Virus record (IMG/VR): IMGVR_UViG_3300008954_003475
Location: 1-64,000 of that record
DNA: 64,000 bases
Reading direction: 5' to 3' (one strand)
Shown: one piece after another, positions 1 to 24,871 of the stretch
Layout: each line of letters starts with the position of its first letter
How positions within the stretch are numbered: position 1 is the first letter of the stretch
Notes under the pieces: generated by a model
Seen by the model: the letters and a program-made list of their open reading frames with translations, nothing else
Database searches by the model: none
Told to the model about the DNA's origin: nothing
Made by a program: the position numbers and the translations under genes

Positions 1-1
1 C

Positions 2-760
2 ATTTGTATCTGTTTTTATATAAAAATCACCTTCACTGCCAGGATCTGTAGAGGTTGGATCATCAGTTCCGTTCAAAATAGTCGCACCGTCTGCACCTGC
101 AGCACCTGCAGGGCCAGTAGAGCCTGAGTCTCCTATTAGTGACGTTGCACTGCCCCAAGCTCCCGAATCGCGAGGTCCATATATATCACTCGTATCTGTC
201 CTTATCCAAAAATCACCATCACTACCATCGGGAGAGCCAGAGCCTTCATCAAACGGAGCGCGATCTCCATTCCAAATTGTCTTTCCATCTATTCCACTCG
301 GTCCTGAAGCACCATCGGAGCCATTGGCCCCGGCATCGCCAGTAGGGCCAGCCGGACCTCTTACGTCTCCTGCATTGATATCAGGCTCTCCACCGCTTCT
401 GGTGAGAATTAAGTTATCACCAGAAATGTTAGCTCCGGTTATAGAGATTCCGTCTGCACCAGAACCACCGCCGCTTGCGGCTGTTGGAGAAGATCCATCA
501 TAAGTTAAGTTTAAACTTTGATTCACATCAAACACCATATCGCCTGTATTCAGGGTTGTAAACTCCCACGCAAGTGTGGTATCGTTGTATGTTGCAACCT
601 TTCCGTCTTGACCAGCCCAAACGTCTGAGCCTGTTCCTACGATGTGGCGATCTCCATCGGATGGAGATAGGGTGGTTGGGTCGTCATGTGTGCTTGCTAC
701 CGGTGGATGTATCTTGCCCGGACCCCAAGGCACTAGTTGGTCTGTTTTTGTATATGACAT
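2..760 (-). CDS. Collagen-like fibre/adhesin protein with N-terminal DUF2793-like domain (partial, runs off left edge; not in ORF track)
   Basis: Manual translation from ATG at 760 (SD AAGGA upstream): MSYTKTDQLVPWGPGKIHPP...SPSDGDRHIVGTGSDVWAGQDGKVATY...WEF. This is followed by Gly-X-Y runs (GPAGPTGDAGANGSDGASGPSGIDG; GDSGSTGPAGAAGADG) and two DGxTIxNG...GDF(W/Y)IxTDT repeats. No stop before position 1. Confidence 0.8.
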   Translation of the reverse strand, partial: MSYTKTDQLVPWGPGKIHPPVASTHDDPTTLSPSDGDRHIVGTGSDVWAGQDGKVATYNDTTLAWEFTTLNTGDMVFDVNQSLNLTYDGSSPTAASGGGSGADGISITGANISGDNLILTRSGGEPDINAGDVRGPAGPTGDAGANGSDGASGPSGIDGKTIWNGDRAPFDEGSGSPDGSDGDFWIRTDTSDIYGPRDSGAWGSATSLIGDSGSTGPAGAAGADGATILNGTDDPTSTDPGSEGDFYIKTDTN

Positions 761-779
761 ATCTGTTATTCCTTATTTG

Positions 780-3700
780 TTAAATTATATACCAGTTTGC
801 ACCATCAGACTGAACTGTAACTGCTACCCATAAGGACGATATCGTCTTGGTTGCTACTCCATCAATGTTTCCTGCGGCAGAAGCTACTATTATATCATTA
901 GCTCCTGCAATCTTTTTAATATTATACAGCCTTCCTTCGCAAAGTGCAGCATCTGGCAATGTGAACGTTATATCACCCCCAGTGTCGTTTTCGCCCAACA
1001 CTGTATAATCACTCTCATCAAGATTTGTGTTTGCATCAGTAACTGTACGAATAGGAAGATTTAACGCACCCTCTGCAGTAACCTCACCATCTACATGCAG
1101 CTTGGTTGCCGGGTTCGTCGTTCCGATGCCGACGTTTCCCTCTACATAAAGACCACTTGTAGGAGGGGTGTTGCTGTGAACATTGTGACCTATTGAGACT
1201 CCACCGGCATCCATATCAACGGCCATTTTGACGTAGCCAGTTCGACCGCCGCGTGCAAATAGGACCTCGCCGCCAGTATTGGCAAAGAGCACCATGTCGG
1301 TACCGTCTTTTTGCGCCATACCCACATCAGATGCACCCAAATGGATCTTATCTTCATTCTGGGTAGTCGAGAAGTCTAATGGTGCGCCTGGACTCGTTGT
1401 TCCGATGCCGACGTTTCCACCGCTATCAATAGTTACTTGGTCGTCAGTGCCATCGGTGCCGAAATGTAGATTATCTGTAGCGTGATTATATGAGATAGCC
1501 CCAGCATGTGCGGATCCTCCGCTGGTACCATCTGCGAAGTAAATAGAGCCCCAATCTGATGAGGTTCCCGCAATGGTTATGCCGCCATTGCCAGCCTCGT
1601 AGATAACAAGGTTATCGGCACTATCATTGTAATCTCCCGGAGAATCTGTTCCGATGCCGACGTTTCCAGCAGAATCGATACGCATGTGCTCCGTTGATTC
1701 TCCTGTTCCGTTTGCTCTGGTAAGGAAAACTAAGTCAGCATCATAGTTTGTGGCTGTTCCGTTTGATTTGGCGGCTCGGATGGTTGCAAACTCTGTTAAA
1801 GAACCCGCGACATCGTAAATGCCTCGGAAAGTAATGCCTCCACCCACGCCCGCAGCTTGGGAGGTGGTATCTGATGCAACTATAGTATACATTCCGAAAC
1901 CACTAGGGTTATGGACATCAAAAGTATAGGCGGGGCTTGTTGTTCCAACTCCAACACGATGGGTGGTGGAATCAACAAATAAAGTGTCTGTATCAACCGT
2001 TAGGTTTCCACCAGAATCTATTGTGGTAACTCCAGACAATGCTCCGCCAGACAGAATGGCCGTACCGTCCGTAAGCGTACCGCCGGTTATTGTGCCGGCC
2101 GATGCTGTTATGTCTGCCACGCCAGTTAAGCTGCCACCAGAAAGGGTGGCCGTACCGTCTGTAAGTGAGGTGCCGGTTATTGTGCCGCTAGAACTAAGGT
2201 TTCCAGTAACGGACAGTCCTGGATTAATATACCAAAGATTTTCCACCATCCCCCAAGAGAGGGTCTTATTTGTATCTCCGAGAAGAGTTATTCCTCCGCC
2301 ATTTGCACTAGAATCATTTGGGGAATCTACTGCGTTTAATGTAATATTCGGATCATCAACAGTCATCTCTTCAGTATTAAGAGTGGTTGTTGTTCCACTT
2401 ACTGTTAGATCATTTACTGTTAGATCACCCGTTATGTTGACATTACCATCTTTATCAATTATCATCCTTGGAGAAAGAGGCGTTGCATCCGCCGGGTCTC
2501 TTGTCCAAAACCGTAATTGACTCTCTCCCGATGGGTCAGTCCAATCGGTTGTAATAGCACCTGCCAAAAGAGGAGTATTCGGCGCGTTTGTTTGTAGCTC
2601 AAATTCGACACCTGCACCAAAACCAGCTACTGGCGTAGCGGAACAGGCGTTAGAAATGCGTTGTCCGTAAGTAATGTTGTCAGAAATAGCGCTTGTGGTA
2701 CTAACCAATAGTGTTTCGGTCCTGGTTTGTCCAACGACATGAAGAGCGGACCCCGGAACGCTTGTCGCAATTCCAACCCGTCCAGCGGAATCTACAGACC
2801 AACCCTGATTAGTGCCATTAGTTTTCGAATACAGCCTTTCAGTATCATGATCATACTTTACAGCGCCCTCACCGGGGATGCCGCTAGCGGATGCAAAATG
2901 CAAGGCATTAACATGCGCCCCATCTGTCGCCTGTATCTTAATGCCTGTATCGTTGACAGAAGGAGAAACTACAAGCTCTTGATCTGGGTCGACCGTACCA
3001 ATGCCAACAAACCCAGCTTGACTGACTGTCATTACCGGGCTTGCAGAAGAGTTTCTAAGCCTAAAGCTTTCAGCATCAGCGCTACCATCTGCGCCCTTAC
3101 TTCCGATAGCCCACTTTAAAGTGCCACCTTCTTCAAATCTTATATTTGTATTATTGGCTGCAGTTGATTCTAGGCCTATGTTGCAAGAATTATTAACATC
3201 AATATTCTTTACAAAAAGCACCTTGCCACCAGGCAGGGAGGGTGAGGCTGTTTCAACATATAATGGATGATCTGTTAAGCTAGAACCTATAGATGCAGTC
3301 GTTGAAACAAACAAATTACTATTAACAGTTGCGGAACCAGCCGTTAAAGCATTGGTAATAGCTGCAGTATCCGCCGTTAAACCTGCCGCAATAGCTGCAG
3401 AATCCGCCGTTAAACCTGCCGCAATAGCTGCAGAATCCGCCGATAAGGTGGAGGAAATTACTGCCGAGAGAGCGGCAAAGTCGAGGACGGTTGTGGCGCC
3501 GGCCGATAAGGCTCCGGCAATAGCTGCCGAGCCTGCTGTTAAAATACCAACATCTGCGGTACCTGCAATATTTGCATTATCGTTCAGCCACAAATCATGC
3601 CATCGCTGGCCATCAATTCCTAAGTTTAAAGTTGCTGACTCAGGTAGAAGATCAGAGTTAATATTCGCAGAGAAAGTAACTGTATCATTGCCCATGATCC

Positions 3701-3863
3701 CATCGGGCTCATTCCCCAATACAATATTTCCGCCTATGGTTATATTGCCAGTTACATCAAGATCTGCGTCTATACTAACATCTTCTGAAAAGTTGAAAGA
3801 ACTGTTTATGGTTATTGGACCACCAGAGTGTGATTCGATTGTATTAACTTTTAACGTACTCAT
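780..3863 (-). CDS. Tail fibre / receptor-binding protein (1027 aa)
   Basis: SD AGGAG; N-terminal MSTLKVNTI; multiple (G)xVGIGT repeats typical of phage fibre shafts; Ala/Thr/Gly-rich; C-terminal fibre-tip-like domain ending SDGANWYII. Confidence 0.8.
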   Translation of the reverse strand: MSTLKVNTIESHSGGPITINSSFNFSEDVSIDADLDVTGNITIGGNIVLGNEPDGIMGNDTVTFSANINSDLLPESATLNLGIDGQRWHDLWLNDNANIAGTADVGILTAGSAAIAGALSAGATTVLDFAALSAVISSTLSADSAAIAAGLTADSAAIAAGLTADTAAITNALTAGSATVNSNLFVSTTASIGSSLTDHPLYVETASPSLPGGKVLFVKNIDVNNSCNIGLESTAANNTNIRFEEGGTLKWAIGSKGADGSADAESFRLRNSSASPVMTVSQAGFVGIGTVDPDQELVVSPSVNDTGIKIQATDGAHVNALHFASASGIPGEGAVKYDHDTERLYSKTNGTNQGWSVDSAGRVGIATSVPGSALHVVGQTRTETLLVSTTSAISDNITYGQRISNACSATPVAGFGAGVEFELQTNAPNTPLLAGAITTDWTDPSGESQLRFWTRDPADATPLSPRMIIDKDGNVNITGDLTVNDLTVSGTTTTLNTEEMTVDDPNITLNAVDSPNDSSANGGGITLLGDTNKTLSWGMVENLWYINPGLSVTGNLSSSGTITGTSLTDGTATLSGGSLTGVADITASAGTITGGTLTDGTAILSGGALSGVTTIDSGGNLTVDTDTLFVDSTTHRVGVGTTSPAYTFDVHNPSGFGMYTIVASDTTSQAAGVGGGITFRGIYDVAGSLTEFATIRAAKSNGTATNYDADLVFLTRANGTGESTEHMRIDSAGNVGIGTDSPGDYNDSADNLVIYEAGNGGITIAGTSSDWGSIYFADGTSGGSAHAGAISYNHATDNLHFGTDGTDDQVTIDSGGNVGIGTTSPGAPLDFSTTQNEDKIHLGASDVGMAQKDGTDMVLFANTGGEVLFARGGRTGYVKMAVDMDAGGVSIGHNVHSNTPPTSGLYVEGNVGIGTTNPATKLHVDGEVTAEGALNLPIRTVTDANTNLDESDYTVLGENDTGGDITFTLPDAALCEGRLYNIKKIAGANDIIVASAAGNIDGVATKTISSLWVAVTVQSDGANWYII
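1120..1667. repeat. Three identical 20-nt dispersed repeats gttccgatgccgacgtttcc (1120-1139, 1399-1418, 1648-1667) encoding GNVGIGT
   Basis: Direct reading of the sequence; copies are identical including third codon positions. Confidence 0.9.
3358..3445. repeat. 33-bp tandem repeat (~2.6 copies) encoding ADSAAIAAGLT
   Basis: Unit atagctgcagaatccgccgttaaacctgccgca at 3358, 3391 and a partial copy at 3424. Confidence 0.9.
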
Positions 3864-3891
3864 CTAATAATTTCTCCTGAGTCAATCATTA

Positions 3892-4518
3892 CTATAATAT
3901 TAGTAAATTAGCATCTTCCTGAATATCTAGCGTAACACCCTCTTGAATATCAATGTCTCCAATCAACATATGGTTCAAACCGGAATAGATATTTAAGTCC
4001 GCTGATAAGTTGGGAACATTGGAATATAAACGAGATTCTGTCATACCCACAACCTCAAGGTATCCAGATACTTGCAATGCCTTTGCCGCACTTGGGTCAA
4101 AAGTTTCTGCATTTGTTCTAGCCCCCGAATTAGTTCTAGATATCTCTAAAGCATTCGTGTCAACGAATGTGCCGGCTGAAACATCATTTACAATTCTTAC
4201 CGCACCACTATCTGCGGTTATTTCCCTTCCAGACCCTCTGACTCTAGGGTCTCGCTCTCTAATGCCAATCCCATCATAGGCTCTATCGAGATGAAAATTA
4301 AACCATGACTCTATATCATCAAGGCGCTCATTTACATCTATAAATTCTTCATCAAAATCTGATATATGTGGAGCAATACCTAATGTATTCTCTATGTTTA
4401 CCGCAGCAGATCGAAGCCTGTTAACGCTTTCTGCGTTAACGGCACTATATCGGTCAACAGCCAGTGGAATCTGGGCATAACCGTCAATTGCTTTGGGATA
4501 AACACTATAATCTGACAT
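3892..4518 (-). CDS. Putative virion/tail-fibre-associated protein
   Basis: 208-aa ORF with SD GAAGG; lies between the basic mini-protein and the fibre gene; C-terminal beta-rich segment (IGDIDIQEGVTLDIQEDANLLIL) of the kind seen in fibre-associated genes. Confidence 0.5.
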   Translation of the reverse strand: MSDYSVYPKAIDGYAQIPLAVDRYSAVNAESVNRLRSAAVNIENTLGIAPHISDFDEEFIDVNERLDDIESWFNFHLDRAYDGIGIRERDPRVRGSGREITADSGAVRIVNDVSAGTFVDTNALEISRTNSGARTNAETFDPSAAKALQVSGYLEVVGMTESRLYSNVPNLSADLNIYSGLNHMLIGDIDIQEGVTLDIQEDANLLIL

Positions 4519-7892: not shown

Positions 7893-8282
7893 TTATGCTT
7901 CATCAATCTCTTCTTCTATTATAGACCAATGTTCAACATTGGCTTCAAAATATAAATTTTTATCTTCATCTTCTTTTAGCGTTAAAACAGGCCCAGCCCA
8001 TTCTCCAATCACTTCGCCGTCATGCTTTACCTCTAAAGCATCTAGGCCAACATACTCTATTATCTCAATATCATTATAGATTAGATATTCTACAGCAACA
8101 TCAGAGGGCATATCAGACAACTCGTCTGTATCCACTCCTATGTAAAACAAAAGATCGCCCAACCATTGCTGTCTAACGTCTTTCACGTCTTTGGCAAAGT
8201 TAACACGATCTGTTAAGATTGTTGTGAACATACCACATGCGTTATAAGTAAGAGACGGAACACGATCCGCCGGCACATGCAA
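7893..8282 (-). CDS. Hypothetical protein
   Basis: Acidic 129-aa ORF between RNR and PhoH; start uncertain (possibly ATG 8231). Confidence 0.6.
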   Translation of the reverse strand: MHVPADRVPSLTYNACGMFTTILTDRVNFAKDVKDVRQQWLGDLLFYIGVDTDELSDMPSDVAVEYLIYNDIEIIEYVGLDALEVKHDGEVIGEWAGPVLTLKEDEDKNLYFEANVEHWSIIEEEIDEA

Positions 8283-10130: not shown

Positions 10131-10172
10131 AATAAAAAAAATCTTAGAGCCCCAACATGGAGGTCCTAAGAT
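10131..10172 (-). terminator. Putative intrinsic terminator after the sigma-factor gene
   Basis: Minus strand ATCTTAGGACCTCC-ATGTT-GGGGCTCTAAGAT imperfect hairpin followed by TTTTTTTATT. Confidence 0.6.
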
Positions 10173-10741
10173 AATATGGTTCTAAGCTTGTTTAGGCTGC
10201 AGTTTCTGATTTGTCTTATACGTTCTGTAGAAAGGTTAAATTTCGTTGCTATTTCATTTAGTCTTTTTCCGATAACTAAGTTGTCAATAACAATGTCTTT
10301 TTCTCTGTCGGATAAAATATTATTTTCATCAATAAACATCTTTTTAAATATTATTTTCATCTCTAACTCAACCTCTTTTTCGTTTAAAACATTACCAAAA
10401 TCACAGCTGCCTAATTCCTTTTTAATACCAGATTTTGCAATCGAAAATCGTTTAGAATTTGAATTGTAATCTCTAAGTTTTTTTGAAATATTCCATTGCG
10501 CCCATCTGAAGAAATCAAAGTTTTTTTGATAATCATATGTTAAGATTGCTTCCCACAATCCAATATAGGCTTCCTGAAATAGGTCTTCTTGAGAAGATAT
10601 ATTTTTATATTTTTTCGCTCTAGACTCTGCAAAGAATTTTGTCTGCACAAAAATATCGTGCATCCAATCCTTTGTATTCTTTTCTTCGTTTACGATATAT
10701 GTCATTTTTATATCAAGATTAGATAAATCGTAATAACTCAT
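10166..10741 (-). CDS. Sigma70-family RNA polymerase sigma factor (regions 2 and 4 only)
   Basis: Region 2 DLFQEAYIGLWEAILTYD...FFRWAQWNI; region 4 HTH LSDREKDIV...LNEIATKFNLSTERIRQI. Confidence 0.88.
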   Translation of the reverse strand: MSYYDLSNLDIKMTYIVNEEKNTKDWMHDIFVQTKFFAESRAKKYKNISSQEDLFQEAYIGLWEAILTYDYQKNFDFFRWAQWNISKKLRDYNSNSKRFSIAKSGIKKELGSCDFGNVLNEKEVELEMKIIFKKMFIDENNILSDREKDIVIDNLVIGKRLNEIATKFNLSTERIRQIRNCSLNKLRTILS

Positions 10742-10744
10742 TCT

Positions 10745-11326
10745 TTATTCATCCTCAGGGTTGTACTGATCCACAAACTCTCCGTCTTTCCAAGTCCTAA
10801 CTATAGAGGTTTCTTCTGACAAAGTAAAGACGGCAATAACATCATCTCTGGTCGAAAAAGATGCAGCACTTATGTGTCTAGTCCCACATCCCTCTGGAAC
10901 TTCTAATGCCGGATTGTCAACAAGCAGATATACTCTACCTCCTATAATTTGACCATTTCTATTGATAACAATAGCTCCATCGGCATCTTCTCTAAACAAA
11001 GCTTCTACGCTCTTCTTAGAAGAGGTTGTTGAAATATCTATATATTTTTGAATTGGATTAATCCCAATTTGTCGCATACCCGATACAAGATAATCTTTTG
11101 CTGTATCAAATACGCCAAACACAACCAGTATTCCTAACTTCTTTTGCCTATCTTTGTTTTCTTTAGATATTTCACACAATATATTGAATATCTTCTTTCC
11201 GACCTTCTGATGCTCTCTCGCAGCACTGAATTGGAAAGAAAAGTCAGTAGACGTAACCCTTTTGGGCGGCTCTACTGAAGTTGCCTGAATTTCTTCTTTC
11301 GACATGTACGACTCCATGGTTTCCAT
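10745..11326 (-). CDS. Stand-alone diadenylate cyclase (DisA_N/DAC) domain protein
   Basis: DAC motifs DADGAIVI (DGA) and GCGTRHISAA (RHR variant RHI); LSEET motif; no TM or DisA linker domain. Confidence 0.8.
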   Translation of the reverse strand: METMESYMSKEEIQATSVEPPKRVTSTDFSFQFSAAREHQKVGKKIFNILCEISKENKDRQKKLGILVVFGVFDTAKDYLVSGMRQIGINPIQKYIDISTTSSKKSVEALFREDADGAIVINRNGQIIGGRVYLLVDNPALEVPEGCGTRHISAASFSTRDDVIAVFTLSEETSIVRTWKDGEFVDQYNPEDE

Positions 11327-11335
11327 ATGAGGTAA

Positions 11336-11344
11336 ATTATACCA
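11336..11344 (-). promoter_or_regulatory. Extended -10 element TGGTATAAT upstream of the DAC gene
   Basis: TGn-TATAAT in an AT-rich intergenic gap, 9 nt before the ATG at 11326. Confidence 0.5.
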
Positions 11345-11398
11345 AGGATTTTAAATGTATAATTAAAAAAAATAAAAAAATTTAATTAAAAATAATTA

Positions 11399-12781
11399 TT
11401 AACTAAAGCCTAATTCATCATATGTGTAGTGAATAATGCGGGTCTCTGAATCGACCGTTTTTAAGTTTATTGGCCCACCCCAAACATCGTGGACATATCC
11501 CATAACCATTTCTAAATGTTTGACATCCAAAGTTCCAACATCTACACTGGCATGCTCCAACTGTAAAATTCCATCTTCAACGCCAACAATACAAATGAGA
11601 GGGGCTCTATAATTATAGAGATCTTTTATTATTGTTTCTTTGATAAAATCCAACTCTGTTCCAATTACCTCAATGGCGTCAATTCCATTTGCAGCCTTTA
11701 TTTGCTTAAAGGAAAAAAGCTTAAGATCTTTTGCCAAATCTTCTGTTAAATAATTTCTTATAAAAGAGATATCATCTTCATCTGCAACTATTTGATATAT
11801 TTTCTGAAAACCATTAATTTCAGATTCTCCATTTTTATGCTTTTCGTCCCATTCTTCTCGTATTTTTGTAAATATTGAAAAACCTAAAAAGTAAGGGTTT
11901 ATATTAAGATGATTCGATCCTGGTTGAACTACTTTTTCATGAATTTTACAAAAGTCAAGATATTCATGCTCTTCAACACAGCCTAGTTTTAACATAATCT
12001 CCGCATGAACAAAGCTTGCAAATCCTTCATTCATTATCTTGGTCATATATTGAGGATAAAAATAATAAGACTCTTGTCTTATTATCTCTAAAATATCTTT
12101 CTGCCAAGGCTCCAAGACTCTCGAATAATTAACCAAAAACCAAATAATATCAAACTCTTGAGACGGTGGAAAACCACTTTCTGCAGGAACCTCTTTGTAT
12201 GAAAAATCATGTGTTCCAAAAACATCATCAAATTCATCAAAACTTGTTTTTTTAAAATGTTTTTCGCCCTTTTTATACCTAGCTCTATTTGGCCCTTTAT
12301 GCCAATCTATATGTTTGTCTAAAGCAAATCCGATGTCCATAACTTTTTCAACTGTTTCAATTCCATACTTTTGTATATACTCCTCTATCCTCTGAGCCCT
12401 CTCGGCTGCATGATATACCATCTTGTTATCAGTTTGTTTGAATAAAAAATTATTTTTAAAAAAGTGAACATGACCAACGACATGCGCTGATACCATGGTG
12501 TTTGCTATGTCTGAATTTGTATCCAACAAGAATGCATAAGATGGGTCGTTATTAAGTACAACTTCATAAATCTTTGAAAAACCCATTTCTCCTTGCATTT
12601 TTTGATATTCATATGATTGCCCATAACTCCAGTGTCTAGCACGAGTAGGGAGGCCATAACTGATTACTTCTAACATTGTTTCTTGCGGAACAACCTCATA
12701 ATTTATTGGATAATAATCCAACTCCATATCATCTGCTATTTGTTCAATTTCTACAACTCTGTCTTTCAATAACTGATTCAC
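11399..12781 (-). CDS. spoVR: SpoVR/YcgB family protein
   Basis: LPTRARHWSYG, IYEVVLNNDPSYAFL, AHVVGHVHFFKNN, YFYPQYMTKIMNEGFASFVH. Confidence 0.92.
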   Translation of the reverse strand: MNQLLKDRVVEIEQIADDMELDYYPINYEVVPQETMLEVISYGLPTRARHWSYGQSYEYQKMQGEMGFSKIYEVVLNNDPSYAFLLDTNSDIANTMVSAHVVGHVHFFKNNFLFKQTDNKMVYHAAERAQRIEEYIQKYGIETVEKVMDIGFALDKHIDWHKGPNRARYKKGEKHFKKTSFDEFDDVFGTHDFSYKEVPAESGFPPSQEFDIIWFLVNYSRVLEPWQKDILEIIRQESYYFYPQYMTKIMNEGFASFVHAEIMLKLGCVEEHEYLDFCKIHEKVVQPGSNHLNINPYFLGFSIFTKIREEWDEKHKNGESEINGFQKIYQIVADEDDISFIRNYLTEDLAKDLKLFSFKQIKAANGIDAIEVIGTELDFIKETIIKDLYNYRAPLICIVGVEDGILQLEHASVDVGTLDVKHLEMVMGYVHDVWGGPINLKTVDSETRIIHYTYDELGFS

Positions 12782-12782
12782 A

Positions 12783-13976
12783 CTACACCTCTATCTGCTC
12801 TTTTGATCTGCTGTCAATATTGAAAAATGCCTTAAGAGCATCAAATACTTCTTCTCTAGACTTTATAACTATAGATACAAACCTAGTTCTCTTTATGTTT
12901 TTACTTAAAATTGACGAAAGCCTATTTTCTTCATTCATCCACGGGCTAAAATCTCCATTTGGAGCTATTTCCCCATACCCAATAGCTCTAACCATTGGCA
13001 ATAACTTTTTAACAAACTCTAAGGCACGCAAATTATCCTCCCCCCAATTGTCACCATCACTAAATTCAAAAACATAATTATTCCAAGATGATGGGGGATG
13101 ATTTGCCTGAATATGTTCATAAGCTAACTCAAATGCCGTACTGCAAAGAGTTCCTCCAGAATTTGATACTTTAAAAAACTCCTGCTCATTAACTATAAAC
13201 GCCCTTGCGTCGTGTGCAATAAATATTAACGAAATATTTTTATATCTTCTCTTAAGAAACTGAACCATCCAAAAGTAAAAACTCTTTGCAATATAAGTCT
13301 TCTCTTGACTCATGGATCCGCTGCGATCCATCATCAAGTAAACTGCCGCATTTGAATGATATTCTTTATTTGTTTCCCAATTTCTATATCTTAAATCATT
13401 TTCGTTAATTCCGCCAATCTTTGCATTGCCTTTTGCTGCATTTCTTTTTAAATTTTCAAAAAGAGTTTTCTTGATATCTATATTTGGAAATATACCCTTT
13501 TTCTCTATAGAGGATAAATCTTCAGTTTCCACTTCTATAGCCGAACTTTTATCTGGCTCCATCCAAGGGAGGTTTAGCTCTTCCAGCAAAATATCAACTA
13601 TCTCATCGATAGTAACTTCTGCATCGAAAACTGCCTCACCCTCTTTGTCTCCAGGCTTATCTCCTTCGGGCTTCTTCTCGCCTCTTTTTCTAAGTCGAAA
13701 CTTATCCCCAGGCTTGACATCAATCCCTTGACCAGTTTTGTCTTTATTTTTTAGCTTTCCATATTTAAACTTATATCTGTCTAAAAAACGTATAGGTATT
13801 TTAATCTTTTTATCACCATCTGATGTGATGATATTATATTCCGTTATAAGGTCTTTGCCATTTTTTCTTATGGCATCATTTATAAGCTTCTTATGCCTAT
13901 CGGAATCTCGCTTGCCCCTTTGCTTGAGCTTCCAGATATCCGATAAGCTTTTTTGCGCTTTCGGTGTATTGGACAT
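12783..13976 (-). CDS. yeaH: YeaH/YhbH (UPF0229/DUF444) VWA-like protein
   Basis: KRDSDRH N-terminus, DLRYR, MMDRSGSM (MIDAS DxSxS), SGGTLCSTA, FSDGDNW. Confidence 0.9.
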   Translation of the reverse strand: MSNTPKAQKSLSDIWKLKQRGKRDSDRHKKLINDAIRKNGKDLITEYNIITSDGDKKIKIPIRFLDRYKFKYGKLKNKDKTGQGIDVKPGDKFRLRKRGEKKPEGDKPGDKEGEAVFDAEVTIDEIVDILLEELNLPWMEPDKSSAIEVETEDLSSIEKKGIFPNIDIKKTLFENLKRNAAKGNAKIGGINENDLRYRNWETNKEYHSNAAVYLMMDRSGSMSQEKTYIAKSFYFWMVQFLKRRYKNISLIFIAHDARAFIVNEQEFFKVSNSGGTLCSTAFELAYEHIQANHPPSSWNNYVFEFSDGDNWGEDNLRALEFVKKLLPMVRAIGYGEIAPNGDFSPWMNEENRLSSILSKNIKRTRFVSIVIKSREEVFDALKAFFNIDSRSKEQIEV

Positions 13977-13977
13977 C

Positions 13978-15897
13978 TCAGCCTCTTGCCATTAACGAGC
14001 TTACATACCTTAATAATTTGTTTGCACTTGTTGCTGTATAATTATACTTTTCGCACAAAGTATTAATTACAACATTTATTCTCTTAAGCTCTTCCTCGTC
14101 TGGATTTCTTGCGCTTACAGTTAAACGGATAACGTCTTGTCTTTCATCGAAGAGTTGTCTCTCAAGCGCTTCACGTAACTTTGGATGATTTTTATAGTTA
14201 TAAGCTCCATCGCCAGATTTTGCAGATCTTAACATCTTTCTGTATATCTCTTGTCTAAAAGATTTCTTGCCGGACTCCGTAATTCCAACCTTCTCCTCAA
14301 TGGATCTCATCAGTCTTTCGTTTGGCTCAACATAATCTCCCCACTCATCTTCAATCGTTGTTCCATCAAGAGATGCGCCAACATGGTCCATATAATTATT
14401 AAGAAGACTTTGAACCTCTTCTTCAAAATTAACGAAGAATGCTTTTTGAACTTCATTTCTTGCAATTTTGCTATACTCCTCTATAACTGAGGTTAATATA
14501 TTTTCAAGCTTCTCTATGGCTTTGGGGTCTAATTTTGGATTACTTGCAAATCCGTCTCTAATAGATCTTATTATATCAACTGGAGTAATGCAGTTTGCGC
14601 CATCTTCGGCCAAAGTTGATGAAATCCTATTTATAATATATCTTGGAGATATTCCCGTCATGCCTTCTGAATCAAATTCTTTTCTAAGAAGGGGAACGTC
14701 TGATTGTGAAAAACCCTCAACCTCTTCTTCGTTGTATAAGCGCATTTTGCTCATTACGGATAAGCCTTCATGCTTTGAATCTTTAAGCCTAGAAAGTACA
14801 GCAAACATAGCTGCGCAATAAAGAGTATATGGCGCTATATGCACACCCTCAAAGGTTGCTTGGCCTATTAACTTTTCATATATCTTAACTTCTTCATTTA
14901 CACTTAAATTATATGGAATCTTTATGACAATAATTCTATCGTGCAAAGCTTCCATCTCGTCTTTGGCTAAAAATCTTTTATATTCTGTTTCATTTGTATG
15001 TGCTAGTAAAAATTCATCTGCATAAATGAAGGGATAGCGTCCTGTTTTTATATTCTTTTCTTGAGCCAGTGTTAGTAAGACATATAAGAATTTTTGATCA
15101 ACCTTTAACATCTCAACAAATTCCATAAGCCCTCTGTTGGCTATGTTCAACTCTCCATCAAACCTATACGCCCTCGGGTCTGACTCTGAACCAAATTCTC
15201 CAATTTTACTCAAGTCCATTGACCCGACAAGCTCTGAAATGTCTTGGCTTTTCTTATCCGATGGAACGAAGGTGCCTATCCCAACTCTTGACTGTTCAGA
15301 AAAACACACCCTGCTTACAGGTAGCTCTAAAAAGTCTCCATCATGATTCTCTTTCAGCATCAACTCCATATAGGGGCTTAATTGGCCATCTATTTTGATC
15401 CCATAATCACTCAAAAACTGACCTCTCAATTTATGCGGAATCGCACAAAGAGGGTCTTCAAACATTGGAGAATCTTTTAGACAATATACTGTTCCATCGT
15501 CTGTTCTGGTAAACTCTTCAAGCCCTCTCTTTAGCAATACGGCCAATTGAGATTTTCCAGATGATGTAGGTCCATACAAAAGAAGTATTCTTCTAGAAAC
15601 TTCGCTCCCTGCTGCAGCGGCTCGTAAGTATGACATTATTTCGCCAATTGATTCATTAATTCCAAATAAATCATTTGCAAAGAAAGAATATTCTTCAATA
15701 TCTCCATCCTCACCCCTTACAATTCCAGCACTCTCAATCATCCTTAAGGTTCTTGAGTGCGCATTCATATGAATCTCTGGCTTCTTAATAACAAGATTAA
15801 TATAATCTCGAAGAGTGCCCTCCCACTTCAAAGACGTTGTCTCCTCTATGTGTTCATCTAAGGACTTAAAGAGTTTTGTAGTATTCTTTTTTGGCAT
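13978..15897 (-). CDS. prkA: PrkA/YeaG family AAA+ ATPase/kinase
   Basis: Walker A YGPTSSGKS, DISELVGS, DPRAYRFDGELNIANRGLMEFVEMLK, GISPRY. Confidence 0.93.
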   Translation of the reverse strand: MPKKNTTKLFKSLDEHIEETTSLKWEGTLRDYINLVIKKPEIHMNAHSRTLRMIESAGIVRGEDGDIEEYSFFANDLFGINESIGEIMSYLRAAAAGSEVSRRILLLYGPTSSGKSQLAVLLKRGLEEFTRTDDGTVYCLKDSPMFEDPLCAIPHKLRGQFLSDYGIKIDGQLSPYMELMLKENHDGDFLELPVSRVCFSEQSRVGIGTFVPSDKKSQDISELVGSMDLSKIGEFGSESDPRAYRFDGELNIANRGLMEFVEMLKVDQKFLYVLLTLAQEKNIKTGRYPFIYADEFLLAHTNETEYKRFLAKDEMEALHDRIIVIKIPYNLSVNEEVKIYEKLIGQATFEGVHIAPYTLYCAAMFAVLSRLKDSKHEGLSVMSKMRLYNEEEVEGFSQSDVPLLRKEFDSEGMTGISPRYIINRISSTLAEDGANCITPVDIIRSIRDGFASNPKLDPKAIEKLENILTSVIEEYSKIARNEVQKAFFVNFEEEVQSLLNNYMDHVGASLDGTTIEDEWGDYVEPNERLMRSIEEKVGITESGKKSFRQEIYRKMLRSAKSGDGAYNYKNHPKLREALERQLFDERQDVIRLTVSARNPDEEELKRINVVINTLCEKYNYTATSANKLLRYVSSLMARG

Positions 15898-21458: not shown

Positions 21459-22397
21459 TTACTTATCGCTACAGAATAAACTTTGACTGACTTCGCCAAG
21501 AAGCCCTGGCATGTCCATCCCTGCACAATCTATCTTTGTTCTTACAAAGTTATAATGATTAGAGAAGCCTTCAAAACTGCCATCTTCGCAGCCGCTATGC
21601 ACAGTGGTGCATAATGTGCCATCAGAATTTTGCGGATATTCTAATGGAATTCCAAGCCCTAAATGAACAGCTTTCCACAAAGCTTTTAGGGCTTCAATTT
21701 GGACAGGATAAAACCACATAAAAGGTTTTTGTGTTTTTCCATGCACCTGTCCATTCTCTTGCAATGGTCTTTCACCAAACCCATTTTCAACGTACCAGTC
21801 CTGGTACTTTGGATAATAAGCATTGCTTATCTCTATGCCAATACTTTTTTTATTTCCATGGTATTTGCTGCAATGCCACGCCCCATGTTGCGTATCTAAT
21901 AGTTGATATATTGTTCCATCATTGTCTAAACAAAAATGGACTGATATTCCCCTTCTATTCAATATATTTGCACATGTTTCTGCAGACAAACATACATCCC
22001 AATGATTAACAAACATAGAAGGCTCTCTATCTGGCTTTCCGGAGTTATCATAATACTTTCCAGGGGTTATAGCCAAACCATCCGGCTCGTCCCATAAAAC
22101 CACCTGGGGCCAATCAATTGGCAAAAACTTACCATTATGGACAATAAAATTACTTTCATTATTTAATGTAGATCTTTTCTTTGGTTTATAATTTGATATC
22201 TCGACTTGCCTTTCGGTCCATATCCTCCTATAGGTCATTGGACCGACAAGCCCATCTGCCGTTACCTTGTGGGCTCTTTGCCACTTTTTAACTTTGTTTA
22301 CCAAATCTTCATCAAAATGTTCAGCGCCAAACCAACTAGGGCTCCACCCCAACTTTAATGAGCTAGATTCATTATAGAAGTCTTTGTCCACAGCCAC
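21459..22397 (-). CDS. N-acetylmuramoyl-L-alanine amidase (Amidase_2) with N-terminal peptidoglycan-binding domain (endolysin-like)
   Basis: PG-binding VKKWQRAHKVTADGLVGPMT; amidase motifs VNHWD, VHFCLDNDGTIYQ, AWH, SIGIEI, NHYNF...KIDC; SD AGGAGG before GTG. Confidence 0.85.
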   Translation of the reverse strand: MAVDKDFYNESSSLKLGWSPSWFGAEHFDEDLVNKVKKWQRAHKVTADGLVGPMTYRRIWTERQVEISNYKPKKRSTLNNESNFIVHNGKFLPIDWPQVVLWDEPDGLAITPGKYYDNSGKPDREPSMFVNHWDVCLSAETCANILNRRGISVHFCLDNDGTIYQLLDTQHGAWHCSKYHGNKKSIGIEISNAYYPKYQDWYVENGFGERPLQENGQVHGKTQKPFMWFYPVQIEALKALWKAVHLGLGIPLEYPQNSDGTLCTTVHSGCEDGSFEGFSNHYNFVRTKIDCAGMDMPGLLGEVSQSLFCSDK

Positions 22398-24871
22398 TAC
22401 TTCCTCCTTCTCCTATCTATTATAGAAGCCCTACCACTTTTTGACCCCTTTTGAAGTCTATTAAAGCCAGACTTTTTCTTTCTGATCTTTCTATTAACTT
22501 CTTCAGAAACGGCATTAACCTTATCCTCTCCCAAGTCTAAAGTCATAGCAACATCTCTATTCTTTTCTTTTTGAGAAGCTATTACCGCTTGTTGCTGACT
22601 TTCCTTCTTTAAATTATCAATCCTATCCCTAGGAAGCCCAAGGCCGGCGAACCAACTATATATCTTAATTGAATCCGAATCAGAATCTACATTGTAAACG
22701 CCCTGATAAATAGGAGCTCCGTTTGTTTGCTCTGAAATCATATGAAAACAATAATTTATGTTTATAGCAGGCAGCTTCTCCAGCACTTCTTTGGATCCGG
22801 CAACTATAACTCCGCCAGCTCTTGTTTGCGTTAAGTCAAAACCAGAAGCAAGCATGTTGGAGTTTAGGCTGTCAATCACAGCCTCTGCTAGTGCCGTTTC
22901 TTCCATATAATCTTCAACCTCCATAACCCCATATATAGAACAATCTCCACAAGAAATAATCTTACCAAAGTCGCTTGGGTCTAAAGCTGTAAACCTGGAG
23001 GGCTTAGCCGTAAGGGTGTTGAAAATATGAAGAGGCTCTACAATTGCATTATTTGCAGCCTCCCAAAACTTAGATTGACTAAGGTTTGCATAAATCTGCT
23101 CAATTCTTGCATTATCAACAACAATTAAATTTGAAACAATATTATCTGCGGTAAGCCTTGCCAGCCTAGAGAGAGTCTCTATAGAATTCTTCTTAGATTG
23201 AGCATCCTCTGTAGCTTTCGGCAAAACATATATAACCCCGACCGGAGTGCCCGTTTCAAATAACATTGGAATCAATGTATCAACAGAGCTTGATCCAGTA
23301 CCTCCGCCACCAGAGACGGCCAAATATACCATATGATTTCCTTCAATTACTCGATCAAACAAGGGCTGCATCAAATCAACACTTTCTGCAAAAATTTCAC
23401 GACCTAAGTCCAAGTCCTTACCAGTGCCTCCAAGGCTTCCTTCTAACAAAAGCTTTTGGCTGCCTGGAACATCAATAAATTCAAGATCTTGAGCCGAAGT
23501 GTTAACCACAGCTACATCATATCCTTTTTGGTGAAATACCTCTGCCAGCCTAGACCCTGCTTGTCCAACGCCTATAATGGCCAGCTCTATACTGACACCT
23601 CTTGTGTTTACAACCACAGGCATATCTTCCTCCTTCTTCTTTTGCATTTTTTCACGCAACCTTTCAAGAACATCTTCTTCCTGTCCATCATCTTTGGCCT
23701 CAAGAAGGGGTTCTGTTAAATCCTCCAAAACTTGGTCCGCTTCACCCGCTCCAAAAGCAGCCATCAGCGCCTCATTGTCTTGGTCAATATTTTTTTGAGA
23801 TTTTTCTTTTCGTTTAATCTCAATTTCTTTTACTTCATTTTTACTCATTATAAAATCCTCATAATATCTATTAAGTTGCTCTAATATCTTTTTTCTATTT
23901 GTAGTCGCAAACGGAACATGTGTTTCATTTTTATTATACGAAATTACTTCACAAAGGTATTCGGAATGTTTATTCATAGGGTCTGCATCAACTGTGATTA
24001 TGTCACAGTTCATAGCTTTTGCCTCATAAAAGCTTAACCCAAGCCCCTCCCTGGTAGAGGGGGCGATAACACAGTGTGATTTATCATATAATTTTACTAT
24101 ATCCTCTCTCTTCAAAACATCATTTATTAGTATTATATTCTTACACTTTTTTGCTATATTAGACTCGTCCTCAGTTAATCTCCCGCTAACCAACAATGTG
24201 GCATCTGATTTGGACATTCTGGAAAAATCTGAAAACGCTTCTAACGTTTGAATTGTATTTTTCTGATTAAAACCTGAATTTACAGGCCCAGGATGATAAA
24301 ATGATAATTTTTCTAGATCACCCTTATTTGCCTTAGGGACAAATAAAGCTCTGTCTACATAATCCCAAGATACTTGTTTTTTATTTTTATATTTTCTAAA
24401 TATATTATAAGAAGTTTCCGTAAGACACCAAACTTGATCAAAAATACTATATGAATTACTTTGAACAAACCTTTTATTTATCCACTCAGGCATTGGTACG
24501 TCAATAATCTTTATTCCAGTTTTTGCCTTAATATTCGAAACCCACTGCCCCTTCATCATAAAAGTTTCAAAAGAAATAATTATATCAATATCATTATCCC
24601 TCACAAGCCTTAAAAGCTGCTTCTCTACAGTTTTTTCCTTTGATAGAACATGAAAAGAAACATCAGATAATAAACTTTCATCATATGGTTCAGGATAATG
24701 ACGCCTAAATGTGCCGCCAAGGGCCTCTTTCTTATATTTTGCTTTTGAAACATAAGAAACTTCATTATTCTCACTAAGAATATCCCCAAGAGACTTTGCC
24801 AAATACCAGAGTCCAGATTCAGAAAGATATGTTTTTATCAAAATCTTTTTATTCTTTATTTTATTTATCAT
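22397..24871 (-). CDS. Fusion protein: N-terminal GT-B (GT4-like) glycosyltransferase + C-terminal tubulin/FtsZ-family GTPase
   Basis: aa 1-340 PSTREGLGLSFYEA (E-x7-E); from ~aa 430 IIGVGQAGSRLA, VNTSAQDL, GGTGKD, SGGGGTGSS (tubulin signature), VVDN, T7-like LDPSDF; basic C-terminal tail. Single uninterrupted frame. Confidence 0.88.
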   Translation of the reverse strand: MINKIKNKKILIKTYLSESGLWYLAKSLGDILSENNEVSYVSKAKYKKEALGGTFRRHYPEPYDESLLSDVSFHVLSKEKTVEKQLLRLVRDNDIDIIISFETFMMKGQWVSNIKAKTGIKIIDVPMPEWINKRFVQSNSYSIFDQVWCLTETSYNIFRKYKNKKQVSWDYVDRALFVPKANKGDLEKLSFYHPGPVNSGFNQKNTIQTLEAFSDFSRMSKSDATLLVSGRLTEDESNIAKKCKNIILINDVLKREDIVKLYDKSHCVIAPSTREGLGLSFYEAKAMNCDIITVDADPMNKHSEYLCEVISYNKNETHVPFATTNRKKILEQLNRYYEDFIMSKNEVKEIEIKRKEKSQKNIDQDNEALMAAFGAGEADQVLEDLTEPLLEAKDDGQEEDVLERLREKMQKKKEEDMPVVVNTRGVSIELAIIGVGQAGSRLAEVFHQKGYDVAVVNTSAQDLEFIDVPGSQKLLLEGSLGGTGKDLDLGREIFAESVDLMQPLFDRVIEGNHMVYLAVSGGGGTGSSSVDTLIPMLFETGTPVGVIYVLPKATEDAQSKKNSIETLSRLARLTADNIVSNLIVVDNARIEQIYANLSQSKFWEAANNAIVEPLHIFNTLTAKPSRFTALDPSDFGKIISCGDCSIYGVMEVEDYMEETALAEAVIDSLNSNMLASGFDLTQTRAGGVIVAGSKEVLEKLPAININYCFHMISEQTNGAPIYQGVYNVDSDSDSIKIYSWFAGLGLPRDRIDNLKKESQQQAVIASQKEKNRDVAMTLDLGEDKVNAVSEEVNRKIRKKKSGFNRLQKGSKSGRASIIDRRRRK

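What the first reader, a model, noticed from the sequence alone, without database searches (positions are those of the whole stretch)
10745..11326. Phage-encoded stand-alone diadenylate cyclase domain with variant RHI motif
Seen: a DAC fold with DGA and GTRHISAA (canonical RHR), no regulatory or TM domains, and its own extended -10 element. Known: DAC domains make c-di-AMP, which controls K+/osmotic homeostasis and sporulation checkpoints, and cyclic nucleotides are also immune signals. Inference: the phage may reset host c-di-AMP, make a decoy or antagonist nucleotide for anti-phage systems, or use the fold as a nucleotide binder.
Basis: partly seen in the sequence, partly recalled or inferred. 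Interest (0 to 1): 0.68.

Follow-up and report, generated by a model that had tools for sequence, protein, structure and literature searches.

The report
Jumbo-phage stand-alone c-di-AMP synthase gene
A clade of uncultured marine giant phages carries a small, well-conserved enzyme of the kind that makes the bacterial messenger c-di-AMP, always placed right behind a three-gene PrkA/YeaH/SpoVR signalling module. I found no phage enzyme of this kind in the reference phage collections or papers I could search.

Summary
Window 10745-11326 (-) encodes a 193-aa protein, probably 186 aa from the ATG at 11305. It has a DAC domain (Pfam 51 bits against a cut-off of 27) and a DAC fold (Foldseek probability 1.00 to CdaA, DacA and DisA). 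The DGA, TRH, Tyr and SEE active-site residues are intact, and there is no TM or regulatory domain. An exact TGgTATAAT lies 9 nt upstream.

RHI is not a meaningful variant. The protein belongs to the DacZ/CdaZ-type branch, where the third position is free: R in 6 of 104 domains, and haloarchaeal DacZ equivalogs carry RHM.

The gene is the fourth gene of a PrkA-DUF444(YeaH)-SpoVR-DAC array, often followed by a sigma factor. The array is conserved in all 16 related viral loci (contigs up to 395 kb) and in two more distant RHK relatives.

The family is under strong purifying selection. It was absent from 50,697 GenBank phage records, BFVD and the papers searched.

Best reading: an active c-di-AMP synthase that raises c-di-AMP in the infected cell, expressed with the PrkA module. 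Activity, product, targets and host are untested.

Verdict: new variant of a known kind, interest about 0.6.

The parts
10745..11326 (-). DAC gene. The maximal ORF is 193 aa; the probable true start is the ATG at 11305 (186 aa). Stop TAA at 10745-10747.
   Evidence: ORF and translation. Pfam DAC 51.2 bits. DAC fold. M8 is nearly invariant and many homologues start there.
10973..10981 (-). Codons for D116-G117-A118, the DGA motif. By homology with CdaA/DisA, the Asp binds the catalytic metal.
   Evidence: D116 and G117 are invariant and A118 is at least 90% conserved in the 34-sequence alignment A1. They align to the DGA of CdaA chains.
10862..10885 (-). Codons for G148-T149-R150-H151-I152-S153-A154-A155. 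This is the 'RHR' position, read here as RHI.
   Evidence: T149, R150, H151 and I152 are invariant in A1. They align to GTRHRAA of CdaA. The third residue is free in relatives.
10811..10819 (-). Codons for S170-E171-E172, the counterpart of the CdaA SEE(T) phosphate- and metal-binding residues.
   Evidence: Invariant in A1. Aligned to SEET of CdaA chains.
11228..11245 (-). Codons for D28-F29-S30-F31-Q32-F33, an N-terminal motif specific to the stand-alone clade. It precedes the long helix (residues 30-60). Its role is unknown; it may serve oligomerisation or partner docking.
   Evidence: D28, F29, Q32 and F33 are invariant. A hydrophobic-D-[FY]-[ST]-x-Q-[FWM] motif recurs across the stand-alone clade. 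It is not aligned to DacZ by hhalign. pLDDT is low here.
11336..11344 (-). Extended -10-like element TGGTATAAT in the 72-nt AT-rich SpoVR-DAC spacer.
   Evidence: Sequence. Position relative to the ATG. The pattern is enriched, 15 against 6.1 expected. It is not conserved in relatives.
11312..11315 (-). GGAG Shine-Dalgarno-like element, 6 nt before the ATG at 11305.
   Evidence: Read directly from the sequence.
11399..12781 (-). SpoVR/YcgB-family gene, immediately upstream of DAC on the same strand.
   Evidence: Pfam SpoVR 363.5 bits. Adjacent to DAC in 16 of 16 related loci.
12783..13976 (-). DUF444 (YeaH/YhbH) gene with a vWA-like region.
   Evidence: Pfam DUF444 293.3 bits. Synteny.
13978..15897 (-). 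PrkA/YeaG gene (AAA_PrkA plus PrkA C-terminal domain), the first gene of the array.
   Evidence: Pfam 376 and 235.6 bits. Synteny. A 480-nt non-coding stretch with several promoter-like sites lies upstream.
10166..10741 (-). Sigma-70-family factor gene. It starts 3 nt after the DAC stop codon.
   Evidence: Pfam Sigma70_r2 and r4. PHROG sigma factor. It follows DAC in about half of the related loci and in L021 and L033.

Best explanation
The gene encodes a catalytically competent, stand-alone diadenylate cyclase of the DacZ/CdaZ type. It lacks the N-terminal PK_C-like regulatory domain and instead has a short clade-specific N-terminal motif followed by one long helix. Like other DAC enzymes it should pair head-to-head and condense two ATP into 3',3'-c-di-AMP using a divalent metal. 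It is transcribed with, or just behind, the phage's own PrkA-YeaH-SpoVR signalling genes, and in this phage also from its own extended -10 promoter together with the downstream sigma factor. The most likely consequence is a rise in c-di-AMP in the infected cell. In organisms that use this messenger, that shuts down K+ and osmolyte uptake and retunes turgor, cell-wall and central-metabolism functions for the long infection cycle of a 300-400 kb phage.

Shown here: domain, fold, motif conservation, purifying selection, synteny, restriction to large phage contigs.

Inferred: catalysis, product, oligomeric state, timing of expression, and every downstream effect. The host is unknown.
For: - Domain and fold: Pfam DAC above cut-off; DAC fold.
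- Active site: D116, G117, Y133, T149, R150, H151, S170, E171 and E172 are invariant, and A118 is at least 90% conserved, across a family that has diverged to 52% identity. These align to the CdaA catalytic residues.
- Type: hhalign against DacZ-class proteins gives 99.6% probability over residues 37-193. NCBIfam's best match is DacZ.
- RHI is compatible with activity by family precedent. The third position is free in the branch, and DacZ equivalogs carry RHM. DacZ of H. volcanii is active (PMC6741144).
- Selection: synonymous sites are saturated (pS 0.65-0.95) while pN is 0.10-0.36.
- Spread: 178 protein clusters of 125-207 aa, most about 180-200 aa, from marine metagenomes.
- Synteny: PrkA-DUF444-SpoVR-DAC in 16 of 16 viral loci, on contigs up to 395 kb, one of them with terminal repeats. 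The same array occurs in RHK relatives L021 and L033.
- Coupling: the SpoVR-DAC spacer is 0-25 nt in several relatives.
- No known c-di-AMP receptor domain or riboswitch was found in the phage record, which points to host targets.
Against: - No biochemical data exist for any member of the stand-alone clade.
- RHR to AAA kills M. tuberculosis DacA (PMC3328451). No single-residue test of the third position was found in the papers searched.
- The host is unknown. If it lacks c-di-AMP signalling, as do most alpha- and gamma-proteobacteria to my knowledge, the host-reset story fails.
- No metatranscriptome run was listed that holds the stretch, so expression is unshown.
- The phage record is only 66% complete, so absence of phage-encoded receptors is weak evidence.
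- In H. volcanii, host c-di-AMP can trigger a TIR-SAVED antiviral effector (bioRxiv 10.1101/2025.06.19.660554). Making c-di-AMP is therefore not automatically good for a virus.
Confidence: 0.5

Rival explanations
1. The cyclase is a working part of the phage's own PrkA-YeaH-SpoVR pathway rather than a tool aimed at host c-di-AMP receptors. Either the module controls the cyclase (by proteolysis, phosphorylation or docking on the conserved N-terminal motif), or c-di-AMP is the module's output or input. On this reading the phage imports a private signalling circuit, possibly into a host that has no c-di-AMP.
For: - DAC sits directly behind SpoVR on the same strand in 16 of 16 loci and in two distant RHK relatives, sometimes with overlapping stop and start codons.
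- YeaG, YeaH and YcgB behave as one signalling pathway in six bacteria (bioRxiv 10.1101/072470).
- The N-terminal motif is invariant yet predicted with low confidence, as expected for a docking element.
- Inteins sit in PrkA and SpoVR of relatives. By general knowledge inteins favour conserved, important proteins, which suggests the phage needs these genes.
Against: - Related stand-alone DACs occur in other large-phage contexts with no PrkA within 8 kb (L022, L030, L032) and in cellular genomes. The enzyme therefore does not need the module.
- PrkA-bearing cultured phages (Thermus phiYS40/TMA, Ralstonia RsoM2USA, huge phages) gave no DAC match.
- No known c-di-AMP-binding domain was found in the phage record.
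Confidence: 0.2
2. Defence interplay. The product interferes with cyclic-nucleotide-based immunity, for example by competing at SAVED/STING-type sensors or desensitising them. Alternatively it triggers host dormancy to exclude competing phages.
For: - c-di-AMP can be read by a CBASS-type TIR-SAVED effector (bioRxiv 10.1101/2025.06.19.660554), so the messenger does touch antiviral signalling.
- Phages are known to target cyclic-nucleotide signals (general knowledge).
Against: - No PADLOC match for DAC, PrkA, DUF444 or SpoVR.
- No known anti-defence genes were seen beside it.
- The one documented case has c-di-AMP activating, not blocking, the effector.
- Nothing in the sequence distinguishes this role.
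Confidence: 0.08
3. The protein is a non-catalytic nucleotide binder, or it makes a product other than c-di-AMP.
For: - The third Arg of the textbook RHR motif is missing.
- The family is far from CdaA and DisA. Only 433 of 1.84 billion representatives score E <= 0.001 with its profile.
Against: - All residues known to bind metal, phosphate and adenine in CdaA/DisA are invariant.
- The missing Arg is missing throughout the DacZ-type branch, which includes an experimentally active enzyme family (PMC6741144).
- To my knowledge, no DAC-fold enzyme with another main product is known.
Confidence: 0.1

Closest known systems
DacZ / CdaZ (DacY) class diadenylate cyclases of Euryarchaeota and some bacteria (H. 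volcanii DacZ, M. jannaschii CdaZ)
   Same: - Closest DAC domain by profile: NCBIfam DacZ is the best match, and hhalign gives 99.6% over residues 37-193.
- Shared extra blocks: NP(I/F)Q/E loop, VRxWK/VRxFK, C-terminal DPxxE.
- A non-Arg third residue in the RHx motif.
   Different: - The N-terminal PK_C-like regulatory domain is absent. The phage protein has about 60 residues there, with its own motif.
- It scores 58.5 bits against the 430-bit equivalog cut-off.
- It forms a separate clade with 100/100 support.
- It is encoded by phages and linked to PrkA-YeaH-SpoVR.
CdaS (sporulation-specific DAC of Bacillus)
   Same: A small soluble DAC of about 200 aa with a helical N-terminal extension in place of TM or DNA-binding domains. 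It also has a thematic link to 'sporulation' genes (SpoVR, PrkA, YhbH).
   Different: - NF038328 scores only 22.4 bits against a cut-off of 225.
- CdaS has two autoinhibitory N-terminal helices and canonical RHR.
- It is a different clade.
CdaA/DacA and DisA
   Same: Same fold and catalytic residues.
   Different: - No three-helix membrane anchor (CdaA) and no linker or HhH DNA-binding domains (DisA).
- TIGR00159 scores 18.9 against 188.8. PRK13482 scores 19 against 201.
- RHR in those enzymes, RHI here.
Phage-borne PrkA/YeaH/SpoVR genes (Thermus phages phiYS40 and TMA, Ralstonia phage RsoM2USA, huge phages; viral spoVR in ocean viromes)
   Same: The same three-gene stress and signalling module carried by large phages (PMC8504454; PMC8940887).
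   Different: PrkA identity is only 29-36%. No DAC match was found in any of the 50,697 GenBank phage records. The DAC is an addition specific to this marine lineage.

Membership tests
DAC domain (PF02457) diadenylate cyclases | Profile match above the curated cut-off | tested here: met
   51.2 bits against 27, E 1.1e-13. Same result on the genome.
DAC domain (PF02457) diadenylate cyclases | Mixed alpha/beta DAC fold | tested here: met
   The AF2 model's 50 best PDB matches are all DACs, probability 1.00, TM 0.60-0.70 by target.
DAC domain (PF02457) diadenylate cyclases | DGA motif | tested here: met
   D116-G117-A118. D and G are invariant in the family.
DAC domain (PF02457) diadenylate cyclases | RHR motif | tested here: inconclusive
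   R150-H151 are present and invariant, and the third residue is Ile. The third Arg is absent from 98 of 104 domains of this branch, including DacZ equivalogs. It therefore defines the CdaA/DisA types rather than the fold.
DAC domain (PF02457) diadenylate cyclases | Ser/Glu metal- and phosphate-binding residues (SEE) and the adenine-stacking Tyr | tested here: met
   S170-E171-E172 and Y133 are invariant and align to CdaA.
DAC domain (PF02457) diadenylate cyclases | Makes c-di-AMP from two ATP in a head-to-head dimer | not testable with these tools
   Needs an enzyme assay. Self-association was not tested.
DacZ / CdaZ class | N-terminal PK_C-like domain | tested here: not met
   Only about 60 N-terminal residues are present. 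hhalign starts at DacZ column 127. No Pfam PK_C-type domain is found.
DacZ / CdaZ class | NCBIfam NF041371 equivalog score | tested here: not met
   58.5 bits against a cut-off of 430. True DacZ proteins score 476-490.
DisA | Helical linker and C-terminal HhH DNA-binding domain | tested here: not met
   The protein ends 10 residues after the DAC domain. PRK13482 scores 19 bits against 201.
CdaA | Three N-terminal transmembrane helices | tested here: not met
   The N-terminus is polar. TIGR00159 scores 18.9 against 188.8.
PrkA-YeaH-SpoVR (YeaG-YeaH-YcgB) module | The three families encoded side by side on one strand | tested here: met
   Pfam AAA_PrkA plus PrkA, DUF444, and SpoVR at 11399-15897 (-). 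Conserved in relatives.

The most novel reading that the evidence does not exclude
c-di-AMP is the missing small-molecule link of the PrkA/YeaG-YeaH-SpoVR/YcgB pathway. On this reading these phages carry a self-contained four-gene circuit in which the module controls, or is controlled by, a dedicated cyclase, perhaps through the invariant N-terminal DFSFQF element. The circuit would impose a dormancy- or stress-like state on the host, possibly even in hosts that have no c-di-AMP of their own. That would give a biochemical handle on a widespread bacterial pathway whose mechanism has been unknown for decades.
Probability: 0.15. Interest if true: 0.85.

Novelty: new variant of a known kind. Interest (0 to 1): 0.6.

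Why it matters
To my knowledge, phages are known to destroy or sequester cyclic-nucleotide messengers, but a phage-encoded c-di-AMP synthase has not been described. None turned up in the papers, GenBank phage records or viral structure library I could search.

If the enzyme is active, a widespread group of ocean giant phages can directly write a host second messenger. That messenger governs potassium, osmolyte, cell-wall and carbon-storage physiology.

The strict linkage to PrkA-YeaH-SpoVR also offers a small experimental system for a conserved bacterial signalling pathway of unknown mechanism: four genes that can be expressed in E. coli, which lacks c-di-AMP.

It also corrects a textbook simplification. 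The third Arg of 'RHR' is not a feature of the DAC fold as a whole.

Tried and rejected
- SpoVR-DAC complex prediction: no verdict (runs 0.41, 0.00, 0.00; the mark is 0.32 on the median). This is not evidence either way.
- Expression: no listed RNA run holds the stretch.
- Paired phosphodiesterase idea: the phage has a DHH/DHHA1 protein (G000:C1:184329-185186, next to PurA) that is conserved in 4 of 4 near-complete relatives. However, homologues at about 40% identity occur in 134 cultured phages that gave no DAC match. The DHH protein near another phage DAC (L032) is not orthologous. Rejected as a DAC-specific partner.
- c-di-AMP riboswitch, PstA/DarA, RCK_C and CBS domains in the phage record: none found.
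- Defence-system membership: no PADLOC hit for DAC, PrkA, DUF444 or SpoVR.
- Host inference failed. The record has a single tRNA-Leu. TerL is about 25% identical to any cultured phage. DnaB is about 25-29%. RNR II is 64% identical to Microcystis phage Mel-JY01 and 60% to Vibrio and Oceanospirillum phages, which is not diagnostic.
- Cellular homologues of the exact family: one hit among 185,579 species genomes, an 8-kb contig of a Pacearchaeota MAG, most likely a mis-binned phage fragment. The scan used family-specific peptide patterns, so it says nothing about more distant kin.
- dN/dS ratios could not be computed for most pairs because synonymous sites are saturated.
- Papers consulted for the role of the third Arg (PMC11066881, PMC10167629) did not mention the residues.

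Full report
**1. What is there**

Window 10745-11326 on the minus strand is an open frame of 193 aa.
- Pfam assigns residues 61-183 to the DAC domain at 51.2 bits (cut-off 27) and finds nothing else.
- An AlphaFold2 model built on 34 family members (pLDDT 74.6, pTM 0.71) shows a disordered N-terminus (1-20), one long helix (30-60) and an alpha/beta core.
- The model's 50 best Foldseek matches in the PDB are all diadenylate cyclases: CdaA, DacA, CdaM/DacM and DisA. Probability is 1.00 and TM 0.60-0.70 normalised to the target.
- HMMER alignments to CdaA chains pair D116-G117-A118 with DGA, Y133-L134 with the adenine-stacking Tyr-Leu, G148-T149-R150-H151 with GTRH, and S170-E171-E172-T173 with SEET.
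- The N-terminus is polar, so there is no membrane anchor.

**2. Start codon and promoter**

- An exact extended -10 (TGGTATAAT, 11336-11344) sits in a 72-nt, very AT-rich spacer after the SpoVR stop. It ends 9 nt before the first ATG and has no -35 match.
- The pattern TGNTATAAT is enriched in the window: 15 matches against 6.1 +/- 2.5 in shuffles, 13 of them on the coding strand.
- The third in-frame ATG (11305) has GGAG 6 nt upstream and corresponds to a nearly invariant Met. Many homologues start there. The real product is probably 186 aa.
- The promoter is not a conserved feature. In several relatives the SpoVR-DAC spacer is 0-25 nt, once with overlapping TAATG. Two others have TAGTATAAT in a longer spacer.
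- The sigma-factor gene starts 3 nt after the DAC stop.

**3. It is a phage gene, in a large and conserved family**

- The window belongs to an IMG/VR virus record of 221,878 bp, estimated 66% complete. It has T4-like baseplate wedge, tail-fibre, DnaB and helicase genes and a divergent large terminase.
- A word-based search found 178 protein clusters from marine metagenomes (JGI, ENA, Tara, Logan). Those listed are 125-207 aa, most about 180-200 aa. They lie on contigs up to 325 kb.
- Across 34 members, down to 52% identity, the invariant residues include D116, G117, Y133, T149, R150, H151, I152, S170, E171 and E172. An N-terminal block (D28, F29, Q32, F33, K44) is also invariant.
- Synonymous sites between loci are saturated (pS 0.65-0.95) while non-synonymous differences are 0.10-0.36. 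That means strong purifying selection.

**4.

- In all 16 related viral loci (about 12 distinct, on contigs up to 395 kb) the order is DnaB-like helicase, PrkA, DUF444, SpoVR, DAC. A sigma factor and/or class II RNR follows, then a small conserved ORF and PhoH/PIN.
- Four relatives are 94-100% complete at 316-395 kb, one of them with direct terminal repeats.
- Two much more distant stand-alone DACs with RHK sit in the same array. In both, two small ORFs lie between SpoVR and DAC. In one, inteins interrupt PrkA, SpoVR and RNR.
- PrkA/YeaG, YeaH and SpoVR/YcgB behave as one signalling pathway of unknown mechanism in six bacteria (bioRxiv 10.1101/072470).
- Viral spoVR is the most abundant 'sporulation' gene in an ocean oxygen-minimum-zone virome (PMC8940887).
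- Cultured phages with PrkA (Thermus phiYS40/TMA and kin, Ralstonia RsoM2USA, huge phages) share only 29-36% identity. No GenBank phage record gave a DAC match.

**5. RHI is normal for this branch**

- A profile search of 1.84 billion representatives gave only 433 hits at E <= 0.001. First come stand-alone proteins of about 170-210 aa. Then come proteins of 260-450 aa with a C-terminal DAC, which NCBIfam recognises as DacZ-like.
- In a maximum-likelihood tree of 104 domains, a stand-alone clade of 27 rows separates with 100/100 support from the DacZ/CdaZ-like clade of 77 rows.
- The residue after RH is R in only 6 of the 104. It is I, L, K, M, R, H and others in the first clade, and A, I, V, L, T, M, Q and others in the second.
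- Three haloarchaeal proteins that pass the DacZ equivalog cut-off (476-490 bits against 430) carry RHM. H. volcanii DacZ is an active, Mn-dependent cyclase (PMC6741144). I could not read the H. volcanii sequence itself, so that last step is an inference.
- The one mutational test found, RHR to AAA in M. tuberculosis DacA, removes all three residues (PMC3328451). It says nothing about the third alone.
- hhalign of the phage family against DacZ-class proteins gives 99.6% probability over residues 37-193, starting at DacZ column 127, which lies after the PK_C-like domain.
- The N-terminal motif (hydrophobic-D-[FY]-[ST]-x-Q-[FWM]) is shared by the whole stand-alone clade and is not aligned to DacZ by hhalign.

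**6. The stand-alone clade is not only phage, and not only PrkA-linked**

- Other members lie in different large-phage contexts:
  - L022, with TROVE, DNA ligase, DUF2201/AAA_5 and ClpB.
  - L030, with dCTP deaminase and UDG.
  - L032, on a 152-kb contig with RNR, Rad52, PhoH and DHH.
- A few lie in cellular contexts:
  - Two sit next to aconitase and fumarase genes.
  - One RHI protein sits on a 599-kb contig with MutS/MutL and an archaeal-type KH/beta-CASP gene.
- The enzyme can therefore work without the PrkA module. An RHI-type stand-alone DAC is apparently also carried by a cellular genome.

**7. How it most likely works**

- Shown: the fold, the active-site residues, the selection and the operon position.
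- Inferred from the DAC family: two domains meet head-to-head, and the Asp of DGA and the Glu of SEE hold the metal. TRH and Ser bind the phosphates, and two ATP become c-di-AMP.
- With no sensor domain, control must come from expression, from the N-terminal element, or from partners.
- Effect on the cell: the phage record has no c-di-AMP riboswitch and no PstA/DarA, RCK_C or CBS domain. The targets are most simply host proteins. A rise in c-di-AMP would then close K+ and osmolyte uptake and lower turgor (established c-di-AMP biology). That is plausible for a phage with a long cycle, but it is not shown.
- The main rival is that the cyclase belongs to the phage's own PrkA circuit.
- A defence-related role has no positive support. 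Host c-di-AMP can even activate a TIR-SAVED antiviral effector (bioRxiv 10.1101/2025.06.19.660554).

**8. Novelty**

I found no evidence of a described phage DAC in any resource I could check:
- no tblastn match in 50,697 GenBank phage records;
- only an 18-bit PHROG hit;
- no DAC fold in the BFVD viral structure library;
- no relevant paper.

The tools may omit records very close to the window, and the paper library is not complete. The enzyme class is known. What is new is the domain-less, phage-borne clade with its own N-terminal motif and its fixed place behind PrkA-YeaH-SpoVR. I file it as a new variant of a known kind.

**9. Limits**

- The host is unknown.
- There are no expression data.
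- The SpoVR-DAC complex prediction returned no verdict.
- The genome-wide scan of cellular genomes used family-specific patterns.
- All catalytic and physiological statements are inference from homology.

Noticed in passing
L033:1-7302 and 10546-15285; L032:1-2431; also L003, L011, L015 and L016 between DUF444 and DAC: Inteins (Intein_splicing plus LAGLIDADG) interrupt PrkA, SpoVR and the ribonucleotide reductase in related phage contigs. This explains the split SpoVR matches and the extra 2-3 kb in several loci.
   Followed up: partly
G000:C1:184329-185186 (-), = L025:955-1812 (-), outside the window: A DHH/DHHA1 phosphoesterase (NrnA/CnpB-like, just under the Pfam cut-offs) lies next to an adenylosuccinate synthetase gene. 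It is conserved in 4 of 4 near-complete relatives. It is also present in 134 cultured phages that gave no DAC match, so it is not a DAC-specific partner.
   Followed up: yes
window 22397-24871 (-): An 824-aa ORF has a glycosyltransferase-like region and a weak PHROG match to the phage tubulin PhuZ (26.6 bits, residues 429-577).
   Followed up: no
window 42017-46618, 46676-56635, 56644-59970 and 62583 onward (-): A run of giant ORFs (1533, 3319 and 1108 aa, then 2738 aa running beyond the window) lies beside a T4 gp6-like baseplate wedge match. They are presumably virion or tail proteins.
   Followed up: no
whole record G000; window 1-64000: Gene orientation is extremely one-sided: 191 of 203 ORFs are on the minus strand. 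GC skew is negative throughout. The record has a single tRNA-Leu(TAA).
   Followed up: no
window 1-4000: GC content is 46.6% against about 35% in the rest of the window. The stretch lies within the tail-fibre-like ORF 780-3863, which may be a mosaic or recently exchanged receptor-binding module.
   Followed up: no
window 7893-8282 (-): A 129-aa ORF overlaps the 3' end of the class II RNR gene by 41 nt. It is conserved next to PhoH/PIN in nearly all relatives and has no Pfam match.
   Followed up: no
P0184, P0340, P0355 and kin (not in the window): A family of about 440-aa proteins in Spirochaetes and Chitinispirillia MAGs fuses a PTS EIIA (PtsN-like) domain to a DacZ-type cyclase. This would link nitrogen/PTS signalling to c-di-AMP.
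   Followed up: no
L036:6001-6528 (NCBI contig of 599 kb): A 175-aa stand-alone DAC of the same clade, also RHI, sits in a cellular genome. Its neighbours are MutS/MutL and an archaeal-type KH/beta-CASP gene.
   Followed up: partly
L018 (NZCX01000035.1, 8.2 kb): The only hit to the exact family among 185,579 species genomes is a short contig of a Pacearchaeota MAG. It is most likely a phage fragment binned by mistake.
   Followed up: no
window 10166-10741 (-): The phage sigma factor gives a weak PADLOC match to MzaA (29.8 bits over region 2 only). This is probably just the shared sigma-70 region.
   Followed up: no
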